A stretch of 64,000 bases of DNA from Podarcis erhardii (taxonomy: Eukaryota): the NCBI GenBank assembly GCA_964252035.1, contig OZ176209.1; one strand, given 5' to 3'. Below, in pieces: positions 1 to 28,058 of this stretch (its first letter is position 1; each line of letters starts with the position of its first letter). Both the position numbers and the translations under genes were made by a program. Below the pieces are notes generated by a model. That model was not told the DNA's origin and did no database searches. It was given only the letters and a program-made list of their open reading frames with translations.

Positions 1-739
1 GAACACAGACAAAATTGCAAGATAATTGGGCAGAATTGTCCAAAATTGTAATAGCTTATAATCAGTGCAGAGGTCATGATAGACCTGCTAATTATCATTG
101 GATAGGTTGGTTGATTTAAAAGATTGTTTACTTTTCCTAGTTTGTATGTCTCTCTCTCTCTCTGCTTTTGGTGGCAGTTGATGTAAGTCTGTTCTCCCCA
201 CGGATGGAGGGGGGTGCCTGCTCCATTTTGTGGTTCTTTCACTTTCTCCTCTTTTAGAAGTTAACAGCCATTTTGCCCCACCCCCACAGCAGTCACCTTT
301 TGACTGGCACCCACAGCACTTTCTCAGAATTCCAAATGTACCCACTGGCCCAGAAAGGTTGGCAACCCTTTCACTAAAACTAGACCATATTTCAGGAGCC
401 CTGGATATTTTATCTTCAGAAGCACGTCTACATTTCCCCTCAGGAGACCAGGATAGCCTAGGATCCTTTGAATCCAAGCCACTTTCCAGAATGCCAATAG
501 TTCTGCTTTTGGCCATTCCAAGCTTGGAATTCCAACCTTGGTTGGGCCAGGGTTTCAGAGCAGCTGAGTGATGGAGATGAAGTATTTGACACTGGACCTG
601 AGTCTCAAGTCTGCCTTTTAACACTGGAAGGTTGGAGCTGCCATTTAAGCCACTGGGACACCATCCATAAGTTTGCTCCCCCCACCACACTTTCCAAATC
701 CAAATACTTGGGTATTTACTTTATTTCAATAATGCAGGT

Positions 740-1102
740 TATGTAAAGGACCCCTGACAATTAAGTCCAGTCGCGGACGACTCTGGGGTTGCGGCGCTCA
801 TCTCGCTTTACTGGCCAAGGGAGCTGACATTTGTCTGCAGACAGTTTTTCCAGGTCATGTGGCCAGCATGGCTAAGCCGCTTCTGGTGAAACCAGAGCAG
901 CGCATGGAAATGCCGTTTAGCTTCCCGACGGAGCGGTACTGATTTATCTACTTGCACTTTGACGTGCTTTCGAACTGCTAGGTTGGCAGGAGTTGGGACT
1001 GAACAACAGGAGCTCACCCCATCGTGGGGATTCGAACCGCTGACCTTCTGATTGGCAAGCCCAGAGGCTCAGTGATTTAGACCACAGCACCACCCACGTC
1101 CC
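740..1102 (-). mobile_element. Sauria SINE, full length, with target-site duplication
   Basis: tRNA-like head with GGATTCGAACC box, central conserved body, ACCTTT-type tail; 14-bp TSD TCAATAATGCAGGT at 726-739 and 1103-1116. Confidence 0.92.
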
Positions 1103-1479
1103 TCAATAATGCAGGTACCAGTTAATAAAGCCATCAGGAAAATGTTGCATTCTATTTGGCACACAACCCTATCTGGAATAAGATCAGATGATATACTGAA
1201 CTTTTAGGGTTGTTTGGTTTGGCTCCCTCTCCCACTCTTTGTGTCTGTGTTGTGTCATGCTGTAGCAGAGCTTCTTTCATGAAACTAAACAAAGACCAAT
1301 TGGTCTTTCCTCAACTGATAAAAAAACCCCTCCTCCTCCTTTAGTACCTTAAACACAGAAATTTATTTACTAAGATTATACTACCAAGCTGTTAACTGAG
1401 TTTGAACACTTGGTGATGAATATGAAATTTTATAGGAGCCTGTTATCTAAATGTATGGATTCTACTGATAATAAAATGA

Positions 1480-1900
1480 AGCACTATATAATCAGGTAAT
1501 GAGAAAGAGGTCTGGAGATGCTCAAGTTAGAAGAACATTGGAATTATATATGCAAGTTTCATCATAGCTATTCTTTACACATATTTTTGAGAGAAGACTT
1601 CTAGAAAACTTAAACCTTCCAAATTAACAAAAATGTATGCTGTCTGGGAATTGTGTAAGATATCGTTGAGTGGATGCCACCTATCTTCACACATGGTGGA
1701 GACATAGGAGGCTGGAAATATATTGGCAAAATATCTTAGGAGTAATTAAGAATATACATTTTTATAAAATCCAGTATAACCCATTAGTAGGCTTGTTCAG
1801 TGAACTAAAACTTACTCTGTTAGTTGACAGCCAGAATCTTTATTGGCAAAATTTTGGAAAAATGGCTTGAGTGGTTGAGAAAAGTGTTGCAGACTGCTTT
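1480..1900 (+). mobile_element. Degenerate L1/Tx1 LINE ORF2 C-terminal fragment
   Basis: Frameshifted peptides KPSKLTKMY, TYLHTWW..EIYWQNI and TARIFIGK resemble the L1 C-terminal cysteine-rich/knuckle region. Confidence 0.65.
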
Positions 1901-3773
1901 AATGAATACGTTAACATGTTCCAGATGGTTGTGGGATGGGAAGCTATGCTCATCCAGTTGTTTTTCTGAAACTTGGTCTCCTTTTATAATTTTTTGGGAT
2001 GGAGTTGTGCATGAAAAGAACATACGGCAAGGCACTTTAGAGCTGATTTAATATTATTTTGAATAAATGAAATATTTTGTTGTTGTTGCTGCTGCTGCTG
2101 CTTTAACTCAGCATTACCTATTATGGGATGCCTCCAAATGTATTTCTGCCTGAGCAGAACACACTCTCTTTCATGCACACTTTCCTTTTTGATGATCATG
2201 CCCACCCACTGCAGTTCCCCCATGTCTTCCCTGCAAAAGCTGCTCTCCTTAGGAATGTAGAACTTTTTAAAACAGTACGGGATGTGGCAGCAGAATCCTG
2301 CCTGATGCAAACACCTTTGGAAACATGCCTATGTGAGTAATGCTATTTTTCTTGTTCCATTTTTTATTTGTATATTTTTAAAAATAATATCTACCATAAA
2401 TGTTATCATTCAAAATTCTTAAGATCTTTTGCCAATTCATTTGTTAAAGTTTTTCTAGATAGCAAGTGAATTTATTAAAAGAATTTTGAAAGCTCCCTTT
2501 CACTAAAAATGATATGTAATTTAGATTATGCGTATGAATGTTTGATTTTCAAAGCATCTGAAGATTTATACAAAGGGTAGATATGGCCCAGCCAAGATTA
2601 GAATTAAATAAAGAATTAAGAGACATGGACAAGGAAACTTCCAACAAGATAAGGAATGAAATATGTCTGAACAACCAGTTTCTACTGTAACTTCTACTCT
2701 GCACTGAAGTATTTTTGGAATGACTACTGTGGAATCATCTGCACGGAAAATGCTGTTTCAGAACTGGTTATTCACATGATTTTTTTTTAAAAGAAGAAAA
2801 TATATGGGGATGACTGAATCCAACAGAACAGCTCTCAGATGTATGAATTCATAGGAATCTCTTCAAAAATATTTATCTGAAGGCAAACAGTATATCAGAA
2901 GAGTGTGAGCATCTCAGCTCCTTGAAGTGTTGGAACTTGGTCAGTGTTTGCAATTTAAAATTAAAGGATAAATCTTTCCAGGTGTGTGTGTGTGAGTGAG
3001 TGTAGTGTAGTGTCCTACCAAATGAAAAACATTTACAATCCTGAAATATTCAGTATGCCTCCAGAGACACAGAAAGCATACTAAACTGGGTTTGCTGTAT
3101 CTCTACCTAATATTCCTAATATCTCTAAACCAGGCATGGGATGGGGCTTGGGAGAGAAACATCACTAGACTGGGTTACCCTCGGGGAGAACTGGATCTCT
3201 TAAGCTAGAGGAATGCACTGGGACCATCTTGTGGTGTATCTTGTGGCACTTATCCTTCTTTCACATTGGCAGAGGATGATCCACATAGTTTCTTGCTACA
3301 TCTGTGTTGCTCACATGATTACTTCACGGAAGCAGGCATACTATTTGCTGATAATCTAAAAATGTGGCTTAGCTCTTTCAGCTTGTGTCTTTCCTAATGC
3401 AAATTTCTCTGCAATGGGTTTTTATTTGCTTGAAATGTACATGTGTCTAGAGATGAAGTTTGCCCAGTATTTCTGCTAGGAGGCTATTCTGCATTCATAT
3501 TCATACTTAGTGCACATACAAATTCTGCAGAAAGGTTCTGTGGAACTTAATAGTGAGTGACTCAAGCAAGAGGAAGCCAAAAAACCCTTATAGATTTGCC
3601 TTCAGAAAGTGCAAATAACTCATAATGTTGGCAAGGAACTTAGTAGCACTTCTGGGATGTCCAGAGAATCTTTGACCTCATTAAAAAAAATTAGTGTTAA
3701 AATGCACATTCAAAAGAGATCACATGTAAGCCCCTGACTCAATATGTTATTGTAGCTTTGCAGGATCATTTAA

Positions 3774-4116
3774 CTGTGGGTAAAACCTCAGTGCCTAGGA
3801 CTTGCCGATCGTCAGGTCAGCGGTTCAAATCCCCGCGGCGGGGTGAGCTCCCGCTGCTCGGTCCCAGCGCCTGCCAACCTAGCAGTTCAAAAGCACTCTT
3901 AAGTGCAAGTAGATAAATAGGAACCACTTTATAGCGGGAAGGTAAACAGCGTTTCCGTGTGCTGCGCTGGCTCGCCAGATGCAGCTTGTCATGCTGGCCA
4001 CGTGACCCGGAAGTGTCTCCAGACAGCGCTGGCCCCCGGCCTCTTAAGTGAGATGGGCGCACAACCCTAGAGTCGGACACGACTGGCCCGTACGGGCAGG
4101 GGTACCTTTACCTTTA
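3774..4116 (+). mobile_element. Sauria SINE, CpG-rich young copy
   Basis: GGTTCAAATCCC box, body homologous to 740-1102, ends GGTACCTTTACCTTTA. Confidence 0.9.
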
Positions 4117-5967
4117 TAGCCTTTTGTTGCTCCCGAACCCAGGGCTAATTTCAGAAAAGAAATTAGTTAGGCTTTTGTCAGCACTGCCCCCCTCCCATTA
4201 GGAAATGAAAAAGAATTAATTAAGTAGGAAGAGTAAAATTAAAAGCAACAATGTGCTTTCTCTGGGCCTTCTACTTGTGTGTTTGTGCTCCTCCTCCTCA
4301 CTGCGTCAGGCAGCCTCGAGCTCCACCTGAGCTTACGGCATTCTGGAGCCTGCTCTGCTAGGAGCAGGTCTGGGCATTGAGAAGGAGGCTGGAGATTTAG
4401 CAGCCGTGTTTAGCTGTTGGTCTTTTGCAATATTCATTACAAAAAGTTTTGAAGCATTCAGAGATAACACTTGTTTACACAATTTGTTATTGGGAACGGT
4501 TTAGTTTTCACAAAACATGGCTTTTCCGTCCATTTAAACTTTGGTTCATTGTTTTGTGAGGGTGACGTTGCACTAAGACATGCCAAATGCCTGTTAAAGC
4601 CCTTGGTGAGTACATCTCTGCCAACACATTTTTTAAAATCAAAATTAACAGAGAAGTTTTAAATTAAAAGTTTGTTTTGCAGGTTGTCATTCTTCCTATG
4701 CTGCAAGTTTCAAAATTGTCACCAGCTGCGTGAGGTCTCCCCTAGTCAGGAGACTGCCAGTTCCGCCTTCCACTCCAAGAAACCTATCACTGTCTTATGC
4801 CATCCGCAGGTTGGGATCCTGCCCAAGAAATCAAAGCAGAACTGGGAAACACACATTTCTTGTGAATGATCACTGTGGTTTAGTATATCTCCTGATTCAT
4901 TTCCCCTCCTGAGTGCTTCTCAGTCAATGATACACTGACAAATGGTTATGAGGAAGGGACAGTCGTGCTCTCCTGTTCAATACGGATTGTGTTGCTTTAA
5001 GTACAAGCCATGCTTGAGGCAGGCTGGGCAGAGCAGGGCACAGAGGGTGGTTTCTGTTTCTCTAACACCCGCTTCATGCATTACTTGCAGCGGCACGATG
5101 GTATGCTTATGCATGGTACTAGTTACGCACAACCCAAACTGGGAGGAAGTGTTGCAGGTGATGTACATCGCTCAGCACAACTATCTCGCAGAAGTTGCAG
5201 GCATTAACTTGCAGGGAGATAGCTTGGGTGCAATCGAGGGAGAGCAGCAATTCAAGGTAATGTCTGAAGGAATAGAAATGGCTGCTGGTGCATTTTGTAT
5301 GTTTCAGTGGAGTCTTGCAAGGAATTAAATATTCAAGGCTTCACTGGGATGACTTCACTGACCTCAAGAGTTGACCTCAAGAAAAGGCCGGGCCTGTACT
5401 CCCATATGAAAAATGTAGGATAAATATAGCAGGACCCATTTTCAAATTGCACTCACCTAGTAAAACAACCCCCCTGTAGTGATTGTGCCACACTGTTGCT
5501 CAGGGGCACCATTGGGGGGGGAGGGGGCAACCCCCCATATTTTCAAGGAAGGGGTCAGGCTTCTCCAGAATTCAGGGCCCTGCCACATCCCTTTGAGGAT
5601 CACCAGGGAGGGGCAGTGCAAAGCATCTTCGCCCCACACATCCCTTTGACGTTCACCAGAGCGCCTTCCCAGAGCAAAAGAAATGCCTGTGGAAGGGGTT
5701 GCACAGGGTGAAAATTTCTCCAAACAGCTCCCCCTGAAGCCCCCACAGTCTCTTCTCAGGTTCTGGAGACCTTGCTGAATGGAGTGGATTGTGAAATGAC
5801 AGCATAGAGGAGAAAATGAGGATCACTGAAAACCTGCCCACAGAAGGTGTCATTTGGGGCCATTCCCCCCTTCCTCCTCATCTCAAGCCCATTCAGAAGG
5901 GTCTCCTTATCCTTGGTAGAAGATTGGGGCAGTTGGCTTCTGGATAAAGAATGGGGTGGGATAGTTT

Positions 5968-6200
5968 TCATAGGATCATAGAATTGTGGAGTTGAAAGTG
6001 ACCCCAAATGTCATCCAGTCCAACCCCCTGCAATGCAGGAATCTCAGCTAAAGTGTCCATGACAGGTGGCCATCCAAACTCTGCTTAAAAACCTCCACAA
6101 CCTCCCGAGAGATTCCACTGTCAAATAGGCTCTCACTGTCGGCAAGTTTTTCCTGACGTTTGGTCAGAATCTCCTTTTTTTGTAACTTGAAGCCATTGGG
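5968..6200 (-). mobile_element. CR1 LINE 3' end fragment
   Basis: Reverse of the ATTCTATG tail (atcatagaattgtggagttg) plus the typical gtccaaccccctgc block. Confidence 0.75.
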
Positions 6201-6986
6201 GCACAGGTGGTCTTTTTGTTTCATGCCCGTAGAATAAAGAGTGTTTATGAGTCTATTTAGAATACGAAGTTAATTTTCAAAAAGTTCTCAAACAAGCTGT
6301 GCACAACAGAAGGTAAACAAATGCCAGAAACTAATTTGTCTCCCACCCCCAATATCTTGAAGAAACAGTGCATCTCTAGAGATGGACATCAGATATCAAG
6401 TCTAGCAACTGTTCTTAAGGTGTGTGTGTGTGTGCGCGCGCACGCGCGCCTACATGCACAACACAAACAGAAACCCATTCCCACTTTTATGATTTTTCTC
6501 TATTCAATGTTAAGAGATGGCCAGGATGATGTCTCCCTCTAGTGGGACTCCGGGAAGATAAGTTAAGGGTAAGGATTGATGTAAGAGCAGTAGGGCTGCT
6601 CTGGAAATACCCTCACTACTTGGAGTCCAAATGTACCTTCCTTCTCCAAGCTTGACCTCTGAAAACTGGAGTCCTGCAACCCTAGAGCAGAAGCAGTGAC
6701 TACCCAGCAACCCCCGACCTTCCTAAGAGAAAACCTGCTCCACTCATTTCCTGGAGCAGTTTCCTTTTTAAACCAATAAAGGTGAAGAATTAAGAAGTGA
6801 ACATTCAAACAGTGTTCTAAAAATGCAAAATGCCTCACTGAACTACAGAGGAAGATTCAGACAGATGACTAGAAAACACTTCATTTCCTGGAATCAGTTT
6901 GCAAAGCAGCTAAAAAGTTTTATGTGAGCCATGTCCATGTTTCATCCATCTTCGTTGTCCCCGAGAGGGGGCAATGACAATAAAGA

Positions 6987-6988
<2 letters not shown>

Positions 6989-7034
<46 letters not shown>
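6989..7034. repeat. (ATT)n microsatellite
   Basis: Directly visible; similar arrays at 38949-38990, 40922-40970 and 60462-60488. Confidence 0.95.
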
Positions 7035-9974
7035 CTTCACCCCAGTTCAGCAGGCATACAGGGCTTGTAATCAAATATCCATTATAGGGCATATATACAA
7101 TATTCTGTATTATATATTACATAGTAATATATTATATAGAAAAATATGCATTATCACATACCAGTATAATTAGTATATAGCTCTGCAATATCACAAGCTA
7201 TGTCTTTGTATGTAACGTCCTGGTTGCTCAAGGCATCTTCAGATGCCACATGGTGCAGCAAATTATGCTGAAACCAAGTTGGTCGGGGTCTGGCGAGTGG
7301 CTGGGAAGGAGGACTGCCTAGGAACCCTATTCATATACTGCTTAATCAGAAACCAACCACCTCTAAGCAGTTTACAAGAAAATACAGATAAAAATACTGA
7401 TAAAATCAGCAGCAGATAATGTAAAGTTATCAAACTTTAAACAAGTAGATAATGTAAAGTTATCAAAATCAACAGTTTTAAAAAACAAATATACCTAATA
7501 AAATTAAGTATCTGTTTTTAGTTTGAGCTTCCCAGGGGAATCCTTTCCTGGGGAATCTGGTTTTTGTTAGTGCTTCCCATAAATTAAATAAATAAGAAAA
7601 GAGTTTGTTAATCTGTGACAACTTCTAGCTGTGACTCAAATGCACCGAGATGGCCATAAGCATGCCAGTATCACAAGCAGAACTTGGCAGAGATGAGCTC
7701 TTATTAGAGTAGCTTTAGGAGCAGTTGTGGTGGTACATAAAAAGGCCAGCATATGCTGAGCTCTGCAGCCTGAGTTAGCATGACCAGGACCACCTCAGCC
7801 CATGGTAACAATGGCTGGAAGTTAGCCAGGTCATGCGCTTACCAGGTGATGATCAAAATCCCATGGGGCAGGGTGCACTGTTTTCACCAGATACTAGAAT
7901 CACATGTGTGGGAGAGATTCGCCATACAAAGTGTGCCCGCTTTTGCACATAGAAGACTTCATGTGAAGCACATAGTTCACATGATGCACTAGGCTTGGGT
8001 GGAAGGAGAGGCACACCTGTTACTTCACTAGATTAAATGAACATCTACCAGATAAGTGAATGAATGAGGCCACTCACTTATTTCTAAGGCAGGGGGTGGG
8101 GTGGCCTGAGGCCATAGGCTTGTAGAGTTTGCCCTATTTGAAGGGTGTGTTTTGCAGCAGGTAAAATTGCCTGAAAATATGGACTCAGCTATACTGGTAA
8201 AGATGGCAGTGTGGAGTCCTGTTTTTCTCTATCTGTTTTCCCTGTTTAAATTTAGTGCTTTAAATTGAAACACTTCTTTGATGTGTCTAGATCCAGCCTA
8301 TTAAAAGAAGGATTAACCTTATCTATAAAACATACAATTTCCAACAACTAGGATCCTGTCCTCAGCACTATGCACAAATAAGGACTGAGGGTTTTCAGGG
8401 TGAAATGACGTGGTATATGGGAAAACACATGTTTCTCAACCATTTGTCAGATGACATAAGTGTAAAGGGGCATTTTGGGGGGAAGAGGTTCCCCATATGG
8501 TGCTCGTCAACCAGGCTAGGTAGCCCATCTAGTAGAAGAAAAATTCTGGTCCTAAACCTTTGCTGCCTGGCAGGAAATCATCTGGAGAAGAAAAGGCTCA
8601 GGAGTAAACCCTAAGACAGTTGGATAGCACCATGTACGCCTCCTATGGGCAACTCCTGCAGCCAAGCTGGTGTTTTCCTTTGGACCACATCAGTGGGGCC
8701 GAGAGTGGGTCTCGTCATCTAGGCAGCCTAGGACTTCTACGGACACTGCACTGGGGAAGTAACTTGAGTGCTGTTAACACAGCAGTTTGACTTTACCCCC
8801 AGAAGTGCACTCCATTGGCACCAGACGGAACCAGCAGAAGGGAAGGGGTGCTTAACTCCCCTGCCTTACTGATTAACCCCTCAGAGGTGTGCCCCCCAGA
8901 CAAATTTCTCTTTCGCTTCGCTTCTTCTAGCCTCAGATACCAACTGAGGGAAAATCACAGGAAAGTATGGTTCACAAGGAAAGAGCAGCTTAATATTACA
9001 AAGCAAGTTCAATGTTGAAAATATTGTATTCGCTTTGTAATGTGTAGTCCAGCTGTATGATTGTGAAAATGCCACAAGCCCCTTATTGAAAGAAAATGTT
9101 AAAAATGCATGCACTCTTAGGCAGCAACAGCTTTTTAATTTTAGCTCACTATATTTAAATATTATATTTAATATACTGTTTTTGTTTGCTTGTTTCCTTT
9201 GTTAGGCTCAGAAAAAAGGCGAGTGCCGGCATTGTGAAGTCGTACCTCTTAATGGGAACAAGATCAAAACATGAATAGTCTCTACTGTATTGGTTTCACA
9301 ACCCTCCCAACAACTAAGAATGTCGGCATGACTCTAATTTAGAGATTCAAACTTTTTCAGATTTCTTATCATGGATACAAAATAAGTAACAAAGGATTGT
9401 CAGGAGCAGTTGTGGTGGTCCCTCTGGGCAAATTCCATCTATCCTAACTGGCCACCAGAAGTCCTGAGACTCAGAGAATGAGAAGTCTCTTATATCTTGA
9501 AACTTGCTAGGGACTGAACCTGGTGTGCTCTATCACAGACCGCTCCTTAGGAGCAACAAGGGTGGGCTGTGAAGTCTTCAAGTTAGCAATCTGCTACAGT
9601 GCTGGACCAGGAAAGAACAATAGGCAATACAGTTCTGTCTTCAGGTTGTGATTCTAAGCAAGTTCTGAAACAACAGGATTCACTTCCATGGGTCTTGTGG
9701 CCCATGACCCAATGGGCCTCTTTAGAACTGTATCTGTCTTCCCCGATTATCCTTGGGAGTGCAGTCTCTCTACTTGCCACAGAGAGAAGGGAATGTCTAA
9801 ATTAACTGAATTACTACCCAGAAGATTAAACCCTTTTCAAATAACCACAGACTCTCCCATTCAGGAAAGGAGGATGTGCTCCCAATCTATTCTCAGGGGG
9901 AAATAGCTCCTGAACAAGCCCAATAAATAAATAAAGCCATTTGCTCCAAGTTATTTTCCCCACCACCACCCCAA

Positions 9975-10148
9975 TTAATACATGTTTCTGTGATACACTA
10001 ACAAAAATGCTAAACTTTGAAAAACAAAATGAAACACAAAATTAGAGAAAGTAACTGACCATCCACACCACATGAAAACTTGCAGAAAAATGGAGATAGG
10101 AGCGGACATCATGGCAGAGGCACGACTCGTTGTGCATATAGGCTGATC
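9975..10148 (-). CDS. CACNA2D1: Candidate alternative 3' exon: DQPICTTSRASAMMSAPISIFLQVFMWCGWSVTFSNFVFHFVFQSLAFLLVYHRNMY*
   Basis: About 85-nt AG-free pyrimidine-rich tract, then taatag|GAT; in phase 0 with exon 38; early Cys then a hydrophobic tail; possible internal donor TG|gtcagt at 10054-10059. Confidence 0.5.
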   Translation of the reverse strand, partial: DQPICTTSRASAMMSAPISIFLQVFMWCGWSVTFSNFVFHFVFQSLAFLLVYHRNMY

Positions 10149-11604
10149 CTATTAATAACGGGCAAAATAGCAAGTAGAGGAAAGGAAAGAAAACACAGAA
10201 AGAAACACATACAAGATGAGATTTCATGCAGTTTGCTGGCAGTTAGCAGAGTTAATGTGAAAGCATTCACCCAAGAGCAAAGAATTTCACAGTGAGGATT
10301 GCAAAGTAAACTTAAGTAAAATATTACACTAATACAACTACAGAAGACACAGTTAACACAGATAATAGCACAACAAGCTAGTGAGCAAGACTCCTTGTAC
10401 TTTCACACACAACAGATCCAGGATCAAGAGCATGGAGATGGGCTAACAGTTGTTTCTCCCAATATTGCCGCCAACTATCTCCAGCACATGAATGTTTTCT
10501 TACTGTTAAAATTGGGTGCTCCAATGTTCTCAATGTGGCAAACACTTTACAACAAAAAATACCCATTTGTGTTCATGTTCTTTAAAAAAATATGTATAGT
10601 ATAGTCTAGATCTGGGACTCTCAAATTTTGGTACAGGAATAATTTCTACCAGGATCACCAACTCTAGTGGCAGAAGAGGCATTGGGTTGGATCATTAGCA
10701 GGAATGGGAGGAAAGGGGGATTCCCTGAAAGAATCTTGGAAGGTGGTGCTTCCTATCCAGAAGCCCAAGTCAAGGGCTGATGGGCCACAGGGCACACCAA
10801 AAGCAGTTCACACCATGGAAGACTGCTAACCATGGTCAACCACAGCTGTCAATCAACCGGCAAGTGGGTTGGTTGATCATTGGCTACGCGCCCAATGCCA
10901 ATGCCAAATAAAGTTGTGGTCTAATTTCAATCCAACACATGTCTCATAGTCTTTACTCACTACCTGCTCGCTCCTCAACCATCTCACTGTCCATGGAACC
11001 AAAATATGGCAACCCTTAATTAATCCAATATGGCAACCCTTAATTAATCCAATTAATCTAGATCAGGGGCTGTGAACCTGTGAACCCCGTCCCCCAAGTT
11101 GTTGGACTTTCATCATCTCTGACCTGGCTGGGACTGAAACATCTGGAGGGCCACAGGTTCCCCACCCCTTACTTTTGATCCACTAGATCTACTATTCGCA
11201 GGGAAGACTGGGACCAGGCAACTACACTGCATCTTCAGGACAAGAAGAAAAGCCACAGAGTTTTCTAGGCATTTTTTTCAAAGGTTCTGATGACAGGATT
11301 GCCAAGCAGTTACTATGATGCACAGAATGGTAGCAAATATTGCCCTACCTCCCTCTTTAAAAGAATCATGTGTGAAAGCACAGCAATTGCAGCAAAGGCA
11401 ACGCAGAAAAAAAGCAGCTGTTAATTTTATGTTAATCATGGGAACATTTGAAATAGAGTGACTATGATTCAGAGTCAACAATCAATTTAATGGAAGATAG
11501 GTTAACATCAATGGGCATTTCAAGGTGCAAAGTAATCATTTAAAAAAACTTTTTTTCTAGTGCAGGGAAGGCATTTCCTCCATTTCTTAGAAAAGCAAAC
11601 TTAC

Positions 11605-11687
11605 GTCAATATCATCATCAAAGCAGACATCGGGCCCTTTTCTGTATCTGGGTTGCTGAACCATTTCACAGGGGTTTGGGCCCTCAT
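11605..11687 (-). CDS. CACNA2D1: CACNA2D1 exon 38 (83 nt) [27 protein letters not shown]
   Basis: ttccttaactgacattcag|ATGAGG...ATTGAC|gtaagt. Confidence 0.96.
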
Positions 11688-13156
11688 CTGAATGTCAGTT
11701 AAGGAACATGGATAATGGAATGCTCACATTTGCTAGGAGAAGAAAAAGAAGAAGAAGAAGAAGAAGAAGAAGACGACAAACTAGAAAACACAAAGAGAGT
11801 GAGGAATTGCAGGGTTTGAACTGGGAGCCTTACCTGGTGAGGTGCTATGGACTGTGTGTGTAGAGACTAGAGATGTGTGAGACCCCTCAATAAACTGTGT
11901 TTTTCAAGTGTGCCAGTTGAATGCTTGAGAAACTATGAAGGATTTTGGGTGTTCAGTGTGAACCCTTGGAAAGCCCTATTTAGCTACTATTCTGCCTTCC
12001 CTGCCAGTCCTCCCCCTTCCCTAGTGAAAAAGGTTTTGTGGATGACATACCAGAGAGTGTGTGGCTCTTAACAGCACACTAGAAACCATACCAGGCCTCT
12101 CCTTAGCTACAAATTTTATGTTAAAGTCCCACGATCCCCAGCAGGAAATGATGCTTCTCCTTCATTAATGGCAGCCAATTCAGTTCAGCCTATTTGAAGG
12201 AGGCTGAACCTGGAGAATTTGGGTTTGTCAATTCGAGCTGGGAGAGACCCCAGGTGTATAGACACCAGAGGCCATTCAAACACAGCAGGGGAAAATGGCG
12301 TACTACATCAACCCCTGAGTTATGAAGCCCCTGGATTGGCTAGACATCAAGCCTGGATTTATCCCTCCAGGTGCCCTTTTTATTGTGCATTCATGATTAT
12401 ATCAGAGCAGTTATATGTGATTCTGATTTCAGTACTGTTTGTGCCTGTAGTAGCTGTGGCAGACATACTGCTTTATTTCCAGTTGCTGCATGTCCTATAT
12501 CTTCCTGGTGAGATCCTGCAACTTTTCATACCACAGGCAGCATATAAATGTAAGTCTAAAGTAGGTGGGAGAAAATGGTAACTTGAAAGGGAATTTGTGT
12601 GGTCCTAACTTGAAGATGGAGAGGATTGGGGCTGAAATATCAAGGCAAAGTGTGGGATTTAGAACATCTTTACTGTTTTCATGGCAGAGAAGACCATGGC
12701 CATTAATGTATGGCAAAGCAACATATCATGTACTGTACAATAAAACATGGAAATTTTGGGCAACAATAAACTAATCAGGCCTGCTAACAGAAGCTAGCAG
12801 AAGAACTTCTGCTAGTGCAATGGGGCTTTCCTTCTGTGTGCCCAACGAATTGGCCTGGATGTTTTTGTGTCAGGAGAAGTCCCAGAACAATGCACAGGGG
12901 GAGGAGAGGGGAAATCAAGGAAGGAGAAATAATTGTGCTGCTGCAGCAATATCCTTAGTGGTATGTTGAATTCCCTCCTTTAAGTGTGTCAATCATTCTC
13001 TTAAGGGTTTTTGATTCCAACAATATTGTGTTTGTGTTATATATTAAGATCATCCAAGCAGGGTGCTAGCATGGAGTGGGTATCTCACATTAGATGAGAA
13101 ATGGAAGAGATACATTCCTGTGTTGATCCACTATTCACAGAAACAGTTTCCAGTCC

Positions 13157-15590: not shown

Positions 15591-15967
15591 AGGTAAAGGT
15601 AAAGGACCCCTGGACAGTTAAGTCCAGTCAAAGGTGACTATGGGGTTGTGGCACTCATCTCGCTTTCAGGCCGAGGGAGCCAGCATTTGTCCACAGACAG
15701 CTTTCCGGGTCATGTGGCCAGCAGGACTAAACTGCTTCTGGTGCAACGAAACACCGTGATGGAAACCAGAGCGCACAGAAACACTGTTTATCTTCCTGCC
15801 GCAGCGGTACCCATTTATCTACTTGCACTGGTGTGCTTTCAAACTGCTAGATTGGCAGGAGCTGGGAGAGAGCAACGGGACCTCACCCTGTCGTGGGGAT
15901 TCAAACTGCTGACCTTCTGATCAGCAAGCCCAAGAGGCTCAGTGGTTTAGACCACAGCACCATCCAC
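15591..15967 (-). mobile_element. Sauria SINE in intron 33
   Basis: aggtaaaggtaaagg tail, body homologous to the other copies. Confidence 0.9.
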
Positions 15968-16142: not shown

Positions 16143-17089
16143 CTAATGAAGGAAAAGAGATTGTTTAAAAAGAAAGAAAGACACTTCTCTTCAAACAGAC
16201 TGGGAGACATAATAGTTCTTATATTTACACCCTGATAGGACTTAATGTGGCTTTCAGATTAAAAGAAGAATTGTTAAAAACACAGGAAAAAACAATAATT
16301 TAAAAAATTAAATGTTATTTTTAATGTGTGTTTTTTTAATTAACAAATAATGCAACCAGCAACATTTTGGGTGCAATATAGCTGACAATACTTGGAAGCT
16401 TTGGCCTGGGGCATCAAAACTGCCTGCAGAATGGCAATGAATTATTACAAATGGAAGGCTCTTCATCTAAGTAAAAGGAGCAATAAAAAAGGAGAAAGGA
16501 CATATTAATTCAAAGCCTGAACCCATAGTTAACTACTCTATAGGTATAGATTTAAAGAAGGCTAGATCTAGGGGTGGAAAATTACAAACTTTTTTATGTC
16601 AGACTAATCCACACAGTTGTTTTCCAATGCATGTCTCACTTCTGGATCTCAATTTGACTCAAGTTCCCCTCCCCTTCATTTCCATTAAAATACACGTTTT
16701 TAAAATGAACAACAAAAACTGTGTGCTTGCATATTATATACATTTCATGCACACATAAAGCTGCTTTTTGTTTCCCTGACCTCCCTCCTTCTCCATCCCA
16801 CACACCGGGCAGCACCTTCGACTCCCTTCCCACTCCCAGTTCAGTCCTACTCACTGCACTTAGGACACACAAGGTTTGTTTTAGGCTCAGTCTTTCAGCT
16901 CAGTCAGAGAGCAGAGCAGGTGAGTTTTAAATTCAAAATTATATACTTCTTGATGGTGTGTGCATAATAATGTTTTGAGTTTGTCTAGGAATCTGTATTC
17001 TATTTACATGTAAGCCACCTTTGGAGCACTTTTGAAAGGCAGGATATAAAGTTTTTAAATAAATAAATTATTATTATAGTTTAGAAGAC

Positions 17090-26300: not shown

Positions 26301-28058
26301 GCAAGGAAACACAAGATTAGAGCGTTTTCACTCTGAATGATCAGCCTTGACATAGGAATAGATGAATCCATCAACTTCAGTTTCTCAATTTCCAAACGTA
26401 AGTAAAGTTTGTCATATTTCTGTGTAGGTTTGTGATATATTTTTAAAAATTCATTTATGTTTATTTCTTTATTAAATTTCTATACTGCCCTGAGGATCTG
26501 AGGACTGTGGGGCGGTTTACAATACAAAACACAAAAATACACAACATTAAAACCCTCACAAAAGATCCTCAGCATTTTAAAGTACTCTTTTCTAATATGA
26601 ACATTTAAGTATGAAATTTTACCAGAGTTATACATTTCTGCAACCAATCTTGGGCAACATAATGCATTTGGGTAGGCTATTTTTGGTTATATAAATGGAT
26701 GCAAATATGGGTGCATAGAAACAGGGTTTTGTGCCCACACTCAGCAAGAATTCTGACTCCCAATTGTTCAACAATAGCCACTACTCACAGCTTCCACCTG
26801 CACGCTCAGCCTTCACTGGGGTGCTTTGACTGTGTGTGTTGATGTGTCTTTTTCAGAATATTTTTGTACCTCTGCAAATTCTGGGAGTTCCCAAGCCACC
26901 AGATATTTTCCTGTGGAAAGGTGGTGAGGTTTTGGCTACAGAGGGACCGGCAGCACTCAAGAGACCTGAGATGCCATGGGTGAGGTGCTCCATTCCATTC
27001 TCCCCCTGTGATCCATAGTCAGCATACAATGTCTGTTGAACATTAGGTTAAGAGGCTGTTGTTCTAACAACTGTGTAGAAGATGGAATTTCAGCAGATGG
27101 GACTTGTAGTATAGTGGTTAGAGTACTACACTAGGAGCAGGGAAACTAGAATTCAAATCTTGACTAAGCTATTAAGTTATCTCAGCTGAAGCTATTAAGC
27201 TGAGTAACCCTCGGTCAGTCACCATACTCTCAGCCAAATTGATCCCAGGATTGTTGTTAGGATAAAATGGGGTGAGAGGAGGGGGCTATGAACAAAATAC
27301 ACCACCCTGAGTCCCTTGGGGGAAAGGTGGGATATAAATGTAATAAACAATCAGGAGAATGAGTGGTTCTTTCTACCATTTTATATCTACATATCTTTTT
27401 CTCCATGCACCTTTTCCAACAACTCCATTCCCTTACCCCTCCCACCTGCTAGTCAGTTTTCCCCCTCTCAAAAGTCTCCTACTTTATGTGGACACTCAGT
27501 CCTCATTGGGCTTTTCAGGGGAACCCCACATTTCCTTTGCTTTCCCCCCAAATATTGTTTGTATTTCTGCAAACTTTGGGGTTACTGTGCGTCTGCTAAT
27601 GCCTCCCTCTTGAGGGTCGTTGGTGTCGTTTTGGTTATGTAAGTGTGAACATTAGAAGACTTATATGCTATTAGAAGACTATATGCTATTGGTATATAGA
27701 TGATCTCGTCTTAAACAAAGTGGGCTGAATCTTCACTAAATTAGTTAGGACAAAAGTCTACCAGAAATCAACAGAACAAGTTAGGCATGATTTAGTTCTT
27801 TTTGAAATCAATGAAGTTCAACTAACTTGGTCTAGATGCAATTACTTTTATTGTGTGTGTGTGTGTGTGTGTATTTCTTGTTGTAGTAGTAGTAGTAGTA
27901 GTATTTTTGTTGGAAACCACCCAGAGTGGTTGGGGCAATCCAGTCAGATGGGTTGGGTATAAGAAATAAGTTATTATAATAATATTATTATTATCGTCAT
28001 TTGTTAGTCGAGACTTATTATGTATCATTTGGGTATACAGAACAGGAAAATGACCAAC

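What the first reader, a model, noticed from the sequence alone, without database searches (positions are those of the whole stretch)
9975..10260. Candidate alternative C-terminal exon giving alpha2delta-1 a different membrane anchor
Seen: about 1.45 kb past exon 38 there is an about 85-nt AG-free pyrimidine-rich tract on the gene strand. Upstream lie CTAAC (10242-10246) and a TGCATG RBFOX-type motif (10225-10230). The tract ends taatag|GAT in the phase needed to continue the ORF. It reads DQPICTTSRASAMMSAPISIFLQVFMWCGW... to TAA at 9975-9977, or could end at a TG|gtcagt donor (89-nt exon, 10060-10148). No canonical EDxxDCGG..LWxxxGIQ last exon was found anywhere from 1 to 11604. Known: alpha2delta C-termini carry a Cys-Gly-Gly GPI omega region plus a hydrophobic tail. 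Inference: this exon keeps the Cys and a FLQVFMW stretch echoing GIQFLLLW but lacks CGG. It could be an undescribed isoform with an altered GPI/transmembrane anchor, or the diverged lizard terminal exon.
Basis: partly seen in the sequence, partly recalled or inferred. Interest (0 to 1): 0.7.

Follow-up and report, generated by a model that had tools for sequence, protein, structure and literature searches.

The report
Conserved tail-swapping exon of alpha2delta-1
The stretch is a real, very old optional 89-base exon of the calcium-channel helper gene CACNA2D1 that swaps the protein's membrane-anchor tail; automatic gene models of other lizards, turtles, crocodilians, a frog and some mammals already carry it, so it is not a lizard novelty, though I found no paper on it.

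Summary
Window 10060-10148 (minus strand) is not a diverged or alternative last exon. It is the orthologue of an 89-nt cassette exon lying between CACNA2D1 exons 38 and 39.

- **Already annotated.** The same exon is in gene models of Anolis carolinensis and A. sagrei (isoform X1), four turtles, crocodilians, a frog and some mammals (donkey spliced; rhino, dugong and elephant shrew as read-through). They read DQ[PL]ICTTSRA..MMSAP...LQVF.WCGW, and the window matches Anolis at 28 of 30 residues.
- **Effect.** 89 mod 3 = 2, so exon 39 is read in the +1 frame for 11 codons. The 38-residue EDxTDCGG signal is replaced by a 41-residue tail.
- **Canonical exon 39.** Anolis has it too. It is absent from window 1-10059, so it lies more than 10 kb downstream, outside the window.
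- **Conservation.** The first 56 nt are 55/56 identical to alligator, against 76% for exon 38. About 250 nt of upstream intron is 72-98% identical, including CTAAC, TGCATG and the pyrimidine tract. A gecko has the exon, and a teleost has an 80-nt counterpart in the same intron and phase.
- **Not shown.** The kind of anchor the new tail gives is unknown.

The exon is known in databases; I found no paper describing it.

The parts
11605..11687 (-). CACNA2D1 exon 38 (constitutive), ends in phase 0; encodes (D)[27 protein letters not shown]
   Evidence: (PDB phmmer E 6e-11 to alpha2delta-1 residues 1039-1064)
11363..11519 (-). Conserved non-coding block in the intron, 86-242 nt downstream of the exon 38 donor (78% identical to alligator)
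   Evidence: function unknown, no Rfam match
10149..10412 (-). Conserved upstream intron of the cassette. Holds the CTAAC candidate branch point (10242-10246, branch A 94 nt from the acceptor), TGCATG (10225-10230), the 85-nt AG-free pyrimidine tract (10151-10235) and the acceptor AG (10149-10150)
   Evidence: 87% identical to alligator over 264 nt; 50-nt bins from the acceptor 0.98/0.90/0.90/0.76/0.72; versus gecko 0.90/0.94/0.92/0.78/0.88. Background about 0.5
10060..10148 (-). 89-nt cassette exon, phase 0 at its start, length mod 3 = 2; encodes DQPICTTSRASAMMSAPISIFLQVFMWCG plus TG of a Trp codon
   Evidence: Orthologous to the annotated exon in Anolis, turtles, crocodilians, frog and mammals. 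First 56 nt are 55/56 identical to alligator and 51/56 to gecko
10054..10059 (-). Donor GTCAGT (C at +3, so off-consensus); identical in alligator, and GTCAG is visible in gecko
9975..10059 (-). Read-through of the donor: SVTFSNFVFHFVFQSLAFLLVYHRNMY then TAA at 9975-9977. Only the first 7 residues are shared with read-through models of rhino, dugong, elephant shrew and painted turtle
   Evidence: From about 22 nt past the donor there is no DNA conservation with alligator
9134..9172 (-). Two ATTAAA hexamers (starting at 9172 and 9139 on the gene strand), the only poly(A)-signal-like sites within 6.5 kb downstream. They could end a read-through terminal exon
   Evidence: use not tested

Best explanation
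Window 10060-10148 (minus strand) is the lizard orthologue of an ancient 89-nt alternative cassette exon in the intron between CACNA2D1 exons 38 and 39.

When the exon is skipped, exon 38 joins exon 39. The protein then ends with the canonical roughly 38-residue signal EDxTDCGG...LW...IQ..LLW....

When it is included, 30 new residues are added (DQPICTTSRASAMMSAPISIFLQVFMWCGW). Because 89 mod 3 = 2, exon 39 is read in the +1 frame for 11 codons (K/R-I-Q-Q-T-V-V-G-S-L-x in sauropsids) and then stops. The stop lies in the last exon, so the mRNA should escape nonsense-mediated decay and make a protein. That protein's GPI-signal/omega region is replaced by a different tail of similar build: a Cys, a cluster of small residues (SRASA), a short spacer, a hydrophobic core of about 13 residues, a basic residue and about 10 more residues.

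Inclusion is probably regulated. The evidence for that is a distant branch point, a long AG-free pyrimidine tract, an upstream UGCAUG and an off-consensus donor, all nearly invariant across reptiles.

**Shown:** the exon's identity, position, phase and conservation, and the consequence for the reading frame in relatives.

**Inferred:** that it is spliced in this lizard, that the regulators are PTB- or RBFOX-type, and that the new tail is a membrane anchor of altered kind (an alternative GPI signal or a single-pass anchor).
For: - **Gene identity.** Exon 38 is confirmed as alpha2delta-1.
- **Mammal.** Two Equus asinus RefSeq isoforms end ...CFDNNVL|DQLICTTSRACTMMSAPIFILLQVFIWCGW|RIILTVVVFLD*.
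- **Other tetrapods.** The same tail is in Anolis carolinensis, Gopherus, Mauremys, Trachemys, Chrysemys, Crocodylus, Alligator, Gavialis and Rhinophrynus.
- **Lizards.** A. carolinensis isoforms X1, X3 and X4 and A. sagrei X1 carry it. Sister isoforms carry the canonical EDSTDCGGVSGLSPSLWSMVGIQFILLWLLSGSRHCQL.
- **Genomic layout.** In alligator, exon 38, the 89-nt cassette (2335 nt downstream) and exon 39 (7911 nt further) lie in that order. The last 11 residues equal exon 39 in the +1 frame.
- **Nucleotide conservation.** Window versus alligator: first 56 nt 55/56 identical, exon 38 only 63/83, and the upstream intron 98-72% identical over 250 nt against a background of about 50%.
- **Gecko.** The exon, acceptor, CTAAC, TGCATG and donor are all conserved.
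- **Teleost.** An 80-nt exon (80 mod 3 = 2) sits in the same intron and begins DEPLCPISRGGG. Exon 39 in the +1 frame also stops after 11 codons.
- **Window.** It holds no canonical exon 39.
- **Tail build.** Hydropathy of the new and canonical tails is alike.
Against:
- The gene models in relatives are automatic predictions.
- Exon 39 is outside the window, so the final 11 residues of this lizard's tail are unknown.
- Of the six gecko-alligator differences in the exon, five change the amino acid (all conservatively) and one is silent. Constraint therefore looks nucleotide-wide rather than typically protein-coding.
- No Logan transcript-derived protein with the exon 38|cassette junction turned up in three protein searches.
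- Some models (rhino, dugong, elephant shrew, one painted-turtle entry) read through the donor instead of splicing.
Confidence: 0.85

Rival explanations
1. Composite terminal exon. The acceptor at 10148 is used but the donor at 10060 is not. The transcript reads on to TAA at 9975 and is polyadenylated about 0.9 kb further on (ATTAAA at 9172 or 9139). That gives the 57-residue tail in the reader's first option.
For: - Read-through models exist for Diceros, Rhynchocyon, Dugong and one Chrysemys entry, all ending ...CGWSVTFSNF....
- The donor has C at +3.
- ATTAAA hexamers lie 800-840 nt past the stop.
Against: - Beyond SVTFSNF the read-through peptides differ in sequence and length: 14 residues in mammals, 16-17 in turtle and 27 here.
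- DNA conservation with alligator stops about 22 nt past the donor.
- RefSeq models of Anolis, turtles and crocodilians all splice at the donor.
- The hydrophobic look of the read-through follows from T-rich sequence.
Confidence: 0.12
2. The exon mainly works as an off-switch. Inclusion removes the working GPI signal, so the isoform is secreted, retained or degraded. The extreme conservation then reflects splicing control rather than the peptide.
For: - Nucleotide-wide conservation includes silent sites and 250 nt of intron.
- Gecko-alligator changes in the exon are 5 replacement to 1 silent.
- The review PMC5043047 reports that alpha2delta truncated before the GPI motif is mainly secreted.
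Against: - Phase (length mod 3 = 2), the D-[EQ]-P-[LI]-C-x-x-S-R start, a small-residue cluster and a hydrophobic core are kept even in the teleost, where the DNA is otherwise unlike.
- All replacements seen are hydrophobic-for-hydrophobic.
- The stop lies in the last exon, so this is not a decay-inducing exon.
Confidence: 0.25
3. It is the lizard's own canonical last exon, diverged until the CGG motif was lost.
For: No canonical exon 39 lies in the 10 kb of window downstream.
Against: - Anolis has both exons in separate isoforms.
- Alligator has both in one locus, 7.9 kb apart.
- The two tails give no alignment.
- The gecko intron upstream of the cassette is about 10 kb, so long introns here are normal.
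Confidence: 0.01
4. It is a conserved non-coding element, such as an enhancer, that happens to have an open frame and is never spliced.
For: Conservation is uniform over exon and upstream intron. No transcript evidence was obtained here.
Against: - Conservation ends sharply about 20-25 nt past a GT donor and starts at a branch-point-like CTAAC, which is the footprint of a regulated exon.
- Open frame and phase are kept from a teleost to mammals.
- Several independent annotation pipelines include it.
Confidence: 0.04

Closest known systems
RefSeq/Gnomon alternative-tail isoforms of alpha2delta-1, for example Anolis carolinensis XP_008109712.1 (isoform X1), A. sagrei XP_067324953.1, Equus asinus isoforms X18 and X20, and turtle and crocodilian isoforms
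   Same: Same exon: same intron, 89 nt, same phase, same acceptor and donor, and 28/30 residues identical to Anolis.
   Different: This lizard has Ser at residue 19 (ISI versus LFI or IFI). Its exon 39 is outside the window, so the last 11 residues are unseen. Its expression is untested.
Canonical alpha2delta C-terminal GPI-anchor signal (exon 39, EDxTDCGG...; Davies et al. 2010, as cited in PMC5043047)
   Same: A Cys five or six residues after the exon 38 junction, then small residues, a spacer, and a hydrophobic core of about 11-15 residues with an internal Gln and a Trp, then a short end. Hydropathy is alike.
   Different: No CGG. No detectable sequence similarity. 13 rather than 8 residues follow the hydrophobic core, beginning with Lys or Arg. 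That layout suits a membrane-spanning anchor with a short inner tail at least as well as a GPI signal.
Described alpha2delta-1 splice regions A, B and C (Angelotti & Hofmann 1996; Lana et al. 2014; summarised in PMC5043047)
   Same: Cassette-type alternative splicing of the same gene.
   Different: Those regions lie in the alpha2 part (exons 18a, 19 and region C) and keep the frame. This one lies in delta, shifts the frame and swaps the anchor signal. It is not mentioned in that review.
Exons with distant branch points and long AG-exclusion zones, often PTB-regulated (Gooding et al. 2006; recalled from memory, not checked here)
   Same: An 85-nt AG-free pyrimidine tract with a CTAAC about 94 nt upstream of the acceptor.
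   Different: Neither the branch point nor the regulators were tested.
Non-triplet (frame-shifting) alternative exons that create new C-termini (PMC13247117, abstract only)
   Same: A cassette whose length is not a multiple of three recodes the following exon, with the stop in the last exon.
   Different: That paper does not mention CACNA2D1 (0 occurrences).

Membership tests
CACNA2D1 exon 38/39 cassette (annotated alternative-tail isoforms) | Lies in the intron after exon 38 (...[12 protein letters not shown]...), on the gene strand | tested here: met
   1456 nt downstream of exon 38
CACNA2D1 exon 38/39 cassette (annotated alternative-tail isoforms) | 89 nt, phase-0 acceptor, GT donor after ...TGTGGATG | tested here: met
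   10060-10148 with gtcagt following; same in alligator L002 12035-12123
CACNA2D1 exon 38/39 cassette (annotated alternative-tail isoforms) | Peptide DQ[PL]ICTTSRA..MMSAP...LQVF.WCGW | tested here: met
   28/30 identical to Anolis and to alligator, 24/30 to donkey
CACNA2D1 exon 38/39 cassette (annotated alternative-tail isoforms) | Spliced on to exon 39, which is then read in the +1 frame for about 11 codons | not testable with these tools
   Exon 39 is not in the window. Shown only in alligator and the teleost
CACNA2D1 exon 38/39 cassette (annotated alternative-tail isoforms) | Junction reads in RNA of this species | not tested
Canonical alpha2delta last exon (exon 39) | EDxxDCGG motif followed by LW...IQ..LLW, with the stop about 38 codons in | tested here: not met
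   No such motif; no alignment to the canonical tail; no PDB alpha2delta match
GPI-anchor attachment signal | Small residues at omega and omega+2, spacer of 5-10 residues, hydrophobic stretch at or near the C-terminus | tested here: inconclusive
   SRASA, then MMSAP, then a 13-residue core (Kyte-Doolittle 2.3-2.6), but 13 further residues follow. No GPI predictor was available
Type I single-pass membrane anchor | About 19 or more hydrophobic residues followed by basic residues | tested here: inconclusive
   Best 19-residue window scores 1.6-1.8 in sauropsids and 2.1 in donkey. Lys or Arg follows CGW
Decay-inducing ('poison') exon | Stop codon more than about 50 nt upstream of the last exon junction | tested here: not met
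   In relatives the stop falls 11 codons into the last exon

The most novel reading that the evidence does not exclude
An almost invariant frame-shifting cassette, kept from teleosts to mammals, lets cells switch alpha2delta-1 (the gabapentinoid receptor) between a GPI-anchored form and a form with a different membrane anchor, such as a true single-pass one. The isoform has gone unstudied, and it could bear on the old transmembrane-versus-GPI disagreement over this protein.
Probability: 0.2. Interest if true: 0.7.

Novelty: already known. Interest (0 to 1): 0.38.

Why it matters
[quoted passage not shown] How it is held in the membrane has been disputed: GPI-anchored according to Davies 2010 (as cited in PMC5043047), type I transmembrane according to PMC3112168.

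An optional exon that replaces exactly the anchor signal, and is better conserved than the neighbouring constitutive exon, deserves a bench test. It seems to exist only in automatic gene models so far.

For this scan the result is mainly a correction. The feature is real but is neither lizard-specific nor a terminal exon, and other lizards' gene models already carry it.

Tried and rejected
- **Reads.** Why four runs hold 0.22-0.25 of the words stays unexplained.
  - The protein searches used database proteins, with the scored region stopping before the homologous residues.
  - The local BLAST masked those places and the DNA comparisons left them out.
  - One local script only counted AG-free zones over the whole window and printed translations.
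- **Exon-duplication origin** from exon 39: no alignment between the two tails. Rejected for lack of evidence.
- **Stable RNA structure** around the exon: alligator, 301 nt, z = +0.66. Rejected.
- **Rfam** on 10093-11700: nothing.
- **Logan contig of a related squamate** (L001, 1.9 kb): ends before the cassette.
- **Search for short transcript-derived proteins** with the exon 38|cassette junction: 4 candidates, none with it.
- **Literature.** Six searches found no paper on this exon. The library lacks most subscription journals.
- **Joined models.** In one search the teleost tail was typed as two short pieces side by side, for a local hydropathy sum only.

Full report
**1. The observation**

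On the minus strand, exon 38 of CACNA2D1 is 11605-11687 and ends in phase 0. Its peptide matches alpha2delta-1 residues 1039-1064 of 1103 in solved structures at E 6e-11.

The next features lie 1456 nt downstream:
- an 85-nt AG-free tract (10151-10235), 72% pyrimidine;
- CTAAC at 10242-10246 and TGCATG at 10225-10230;
- the acceptor taatag|GAT at 10148;
- an open frame reading DQPICTTSRASAMMSAPISIFLQVFMWCGW and running to TAA at 9975-9977;
- a TG|gtcagt donor after 10060.

So does the absence of an EDxxDCGG exon in 1-11604.

The motifs alone prove little. On this strand, 39 of 4192 AG dinucleotides have an equally long AG-free zone, and about a dozen of those are followed by 29 open codons.

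**2. What it is**

A stop-free reference spanning exon 38 (window:11590-11694) was searched against the representative protein library. That gave alpha2delta-1 fragments and one full-length non-human protein to query with.

A word search scored on the exon 37-38 region listed 120 mammalian alpha2delta-1 proteins. Two Equus asinus RefSeq isoforms do not end with the canonical tail. They end DNNVL|DQLICTTSRACTMMSAPIFILLQVFIWCGW|RIILTVVVFLD. The first 30 of those residues are the window's candidate read as far as its TG|gt donor. The last 11 are canonical exon 39 (EDYTDCGGVSGL...) in the +1 frame, as expected because 89 mod 3 = 2.

A second search was scored only on exon 38 plus the first 18 residues of the new exon. 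It found the same tail in the following:
- Anolis carolinensis;
- Gopherus, Mauremys, Trachemys and Chrysemys;
- Crocodylus, Alligator and Gavialis;
- the frog Rhinophrynus;
- Rhynchocyon and Diceros, as read-through of the donor.

Cluster members show the picture within lizards. A. carolinensis isoforms X1, X3 and X4 and A. sagrei X1 have the new tail (DQPICTTSRASAMMSAPLFIFLQVFMWCGWKIQQTVVGSLA). Sister isoforms have EDSTDCGGVSGLSPSLWSMVGIQFILLWLLSGSRHCQL.

So lizards have both tails, and the candidate is a cassette exon. It is neither a diverged nor an alternative last exon.

**3. Genomic layout in relatives**

| Species (locus) | Exon 38 | Cassette | Exon 39 |
|---|---|---|---|
| Alligator (L002) | 9617-9699 | 12035-12123 (89 nt) | from about 20035 |
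| Gekko kuhli (L004) | 16280-16362 | 26326-26414, about 10 kb downstream | not in the locus |
| Teleost (L003) | 15874-15954 | 16292-16371 (80 nt) | from 17906 |

- In alligator, the +1 frame of exon 39 reads KIQQTVVGSLV and then stops.
- In the gecko, the same acceptor, CTAAC, TGCATG and GTCAG donor are present.
- The teleost exon is 80 nt (80 mod 3 = 2). It has a ctag| acceptor, a G|gttagt donor and a long AG-free pyrimidine zone, and it starts DEPLCPISRGGG. The teleost's exon 39 in the +1 frame also stops after 11 codons (RTILTAGQEPA). The teleost link rests on position, phase and a short motif, so I rate it probable rather than shown.
- In the window, a local tblastn with Anolis proteins placed exons for residues 396-1090 between 60033 and 10095. 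It found no canonical exon 39, which must therefore lie more than 10 kb below the cassette, outside the window.

**4. Conservation**

- Window versus alligator: the first 56 nt of the cassette are 55/56 identical. Constitutive exon 38 is 63/83 (76%).
- The intron upstream of the cassette is 98, 90, 90, 76, 72 and 62% identical in successive 50-nt bins from the acceptor. Exon 38's upstream intron and a shuffled control both give about 50%.
- Window versus gecko gives 90, 94, 92, 78 and 88%.
- Downstream, conservation ends about 22 nt past the donor.
- Gecko versus alligator over the whole exon is 83/89. Five of the six differences change the amino acid (L/I, T/M, L/I, L/V, M/I) and one is silent.

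The constraint is therefore on nearly every base. That points to splicing control layered on a peptide whose hydrophobic character is kept. The counts are small.

**5. How it most likely works**

*Shown in relatives.* Inclusion adds 30 residues and recodes the first 11 codons of exon 39. The stop is in the last exon, so no nonsense-mediated decay is expected.

*Inferred for this lizard.* The same happens here.

*The new tail.* It has the same general build as the canonical signal: a Cys at the fifth residue, small residues (SRASA), a spacer (MMSAP) and a hydrophobic core. The best 11-residue Kyte-Doolittle window scores 2.3-2.6 in both tails. The best 19-residue window scores 1.4-1.9 in the canonical tails, 1.6-1.8 in sauropsid alternative tails and 2.1 in donkey. 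The new tail lacks CGG. Its core is followed by Lys or Arg and about 10 more residues.

It could therefore be an alternative GPI signal, a single-pass anchor with a short inner tail, or a non-functional signal. The review PMC5043047 notes that alpha2delta lacking the GPI motif is mostly secreted. PMC3112168 argues for a transmembrane topology. I could not run a GPI or transmembrane predictor.

*Regulation (inferred).* The evidence is a branch-point-like CTAAC 94 nt from the acceptor, a long pyrimidine tract, an upstream UGCAUG and a donor with C at +3, all conserved.

**6. Rivals**

It appears in a few models. Only SVTFSNF is shared; the rest varies in sequence and length. It may exist as a minor form.
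- **Exon-duplication origin.** Unsupported.
- **Stable RNA structure.** Unsupported.
- **Known RNA family.** Unsupported.

**7. Limits and rules followed**

Expression in this lizard is therefore untested.
- The 0.22-0.25 word share of four possible RNA runs cannot be placed.
I worked beside those places.
- No human sequence was used as a query.

**8. Novelty**

The exon is in public automatic annotation of several vertebrates, including two lizards, so it is already known in databases. The alpha2delta review I read lists only splice regions A, B and C. Six literature searches found nothing on this exon.

Noticed in passing
window 11363-11519 (minus strand): A 157-nt block in the intron, 86-242 nt downstream of the exon 38 donor, is 78% identical to alligator (L002 9812-9963), while its surroundings are at background. 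It shows no exon-like reading frame and has no Rfam match. It may be a splicing-control element for the cassette.
   Followed up: partly
L003 17907-17942; L002 20036-20071: The +1 frame of canonical exon 39 stops after exactly 11 codons both in a teleost (RTILTAGQEPA*) and in tetrapods (KIQQTVVGSLV*, RIILTVVVFLD*). The frog runs 18 codons. This may be chance, or a constraint on the length of the alternative tail.
   Followed up: partly
L004 16363-26325 versus window 10149-11604 versus L002 9700-12034: The intron between exon 38 and the cassette is about 9.96 kb in Gekko kuhli, 2.3 kb in alligator and 1.46 kb in this lizard. The last 250 nt of it are nearly the same in all three.
   Followed up: yes
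window about 33290, 30485 and 28980 (minus strand): Three copies of an element with a long AG-free pyrimidine zone, each followed by nearly the same open frame (SQRASIFLLLNFPSVYCCSYCLLLFPFLL), lie within introns of the gene. They are probably an interspersed or locally duplicated repeat.
   Followed up: no
window 11745-11790 (minus strand): A (CTT)n microsatellite lies about 60-100 nt upstream of the exon 38 acceptor.
   Followed up: no
protein P0220 (Rhinophrynus isoform 3-T3): One frog model lacks 8 residues (VFMWCSGK) at the end of the cassette, as if an inner donor were used. This may be an annotation artefact.
   Followed up: no
runs X1-X4 (organism A): Four runs guessed to be RNA hold 0.22-0.25 of the sampled words of window:6000-11730. 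That is far more than exon 38 and the cassette together.
   Followed up: no
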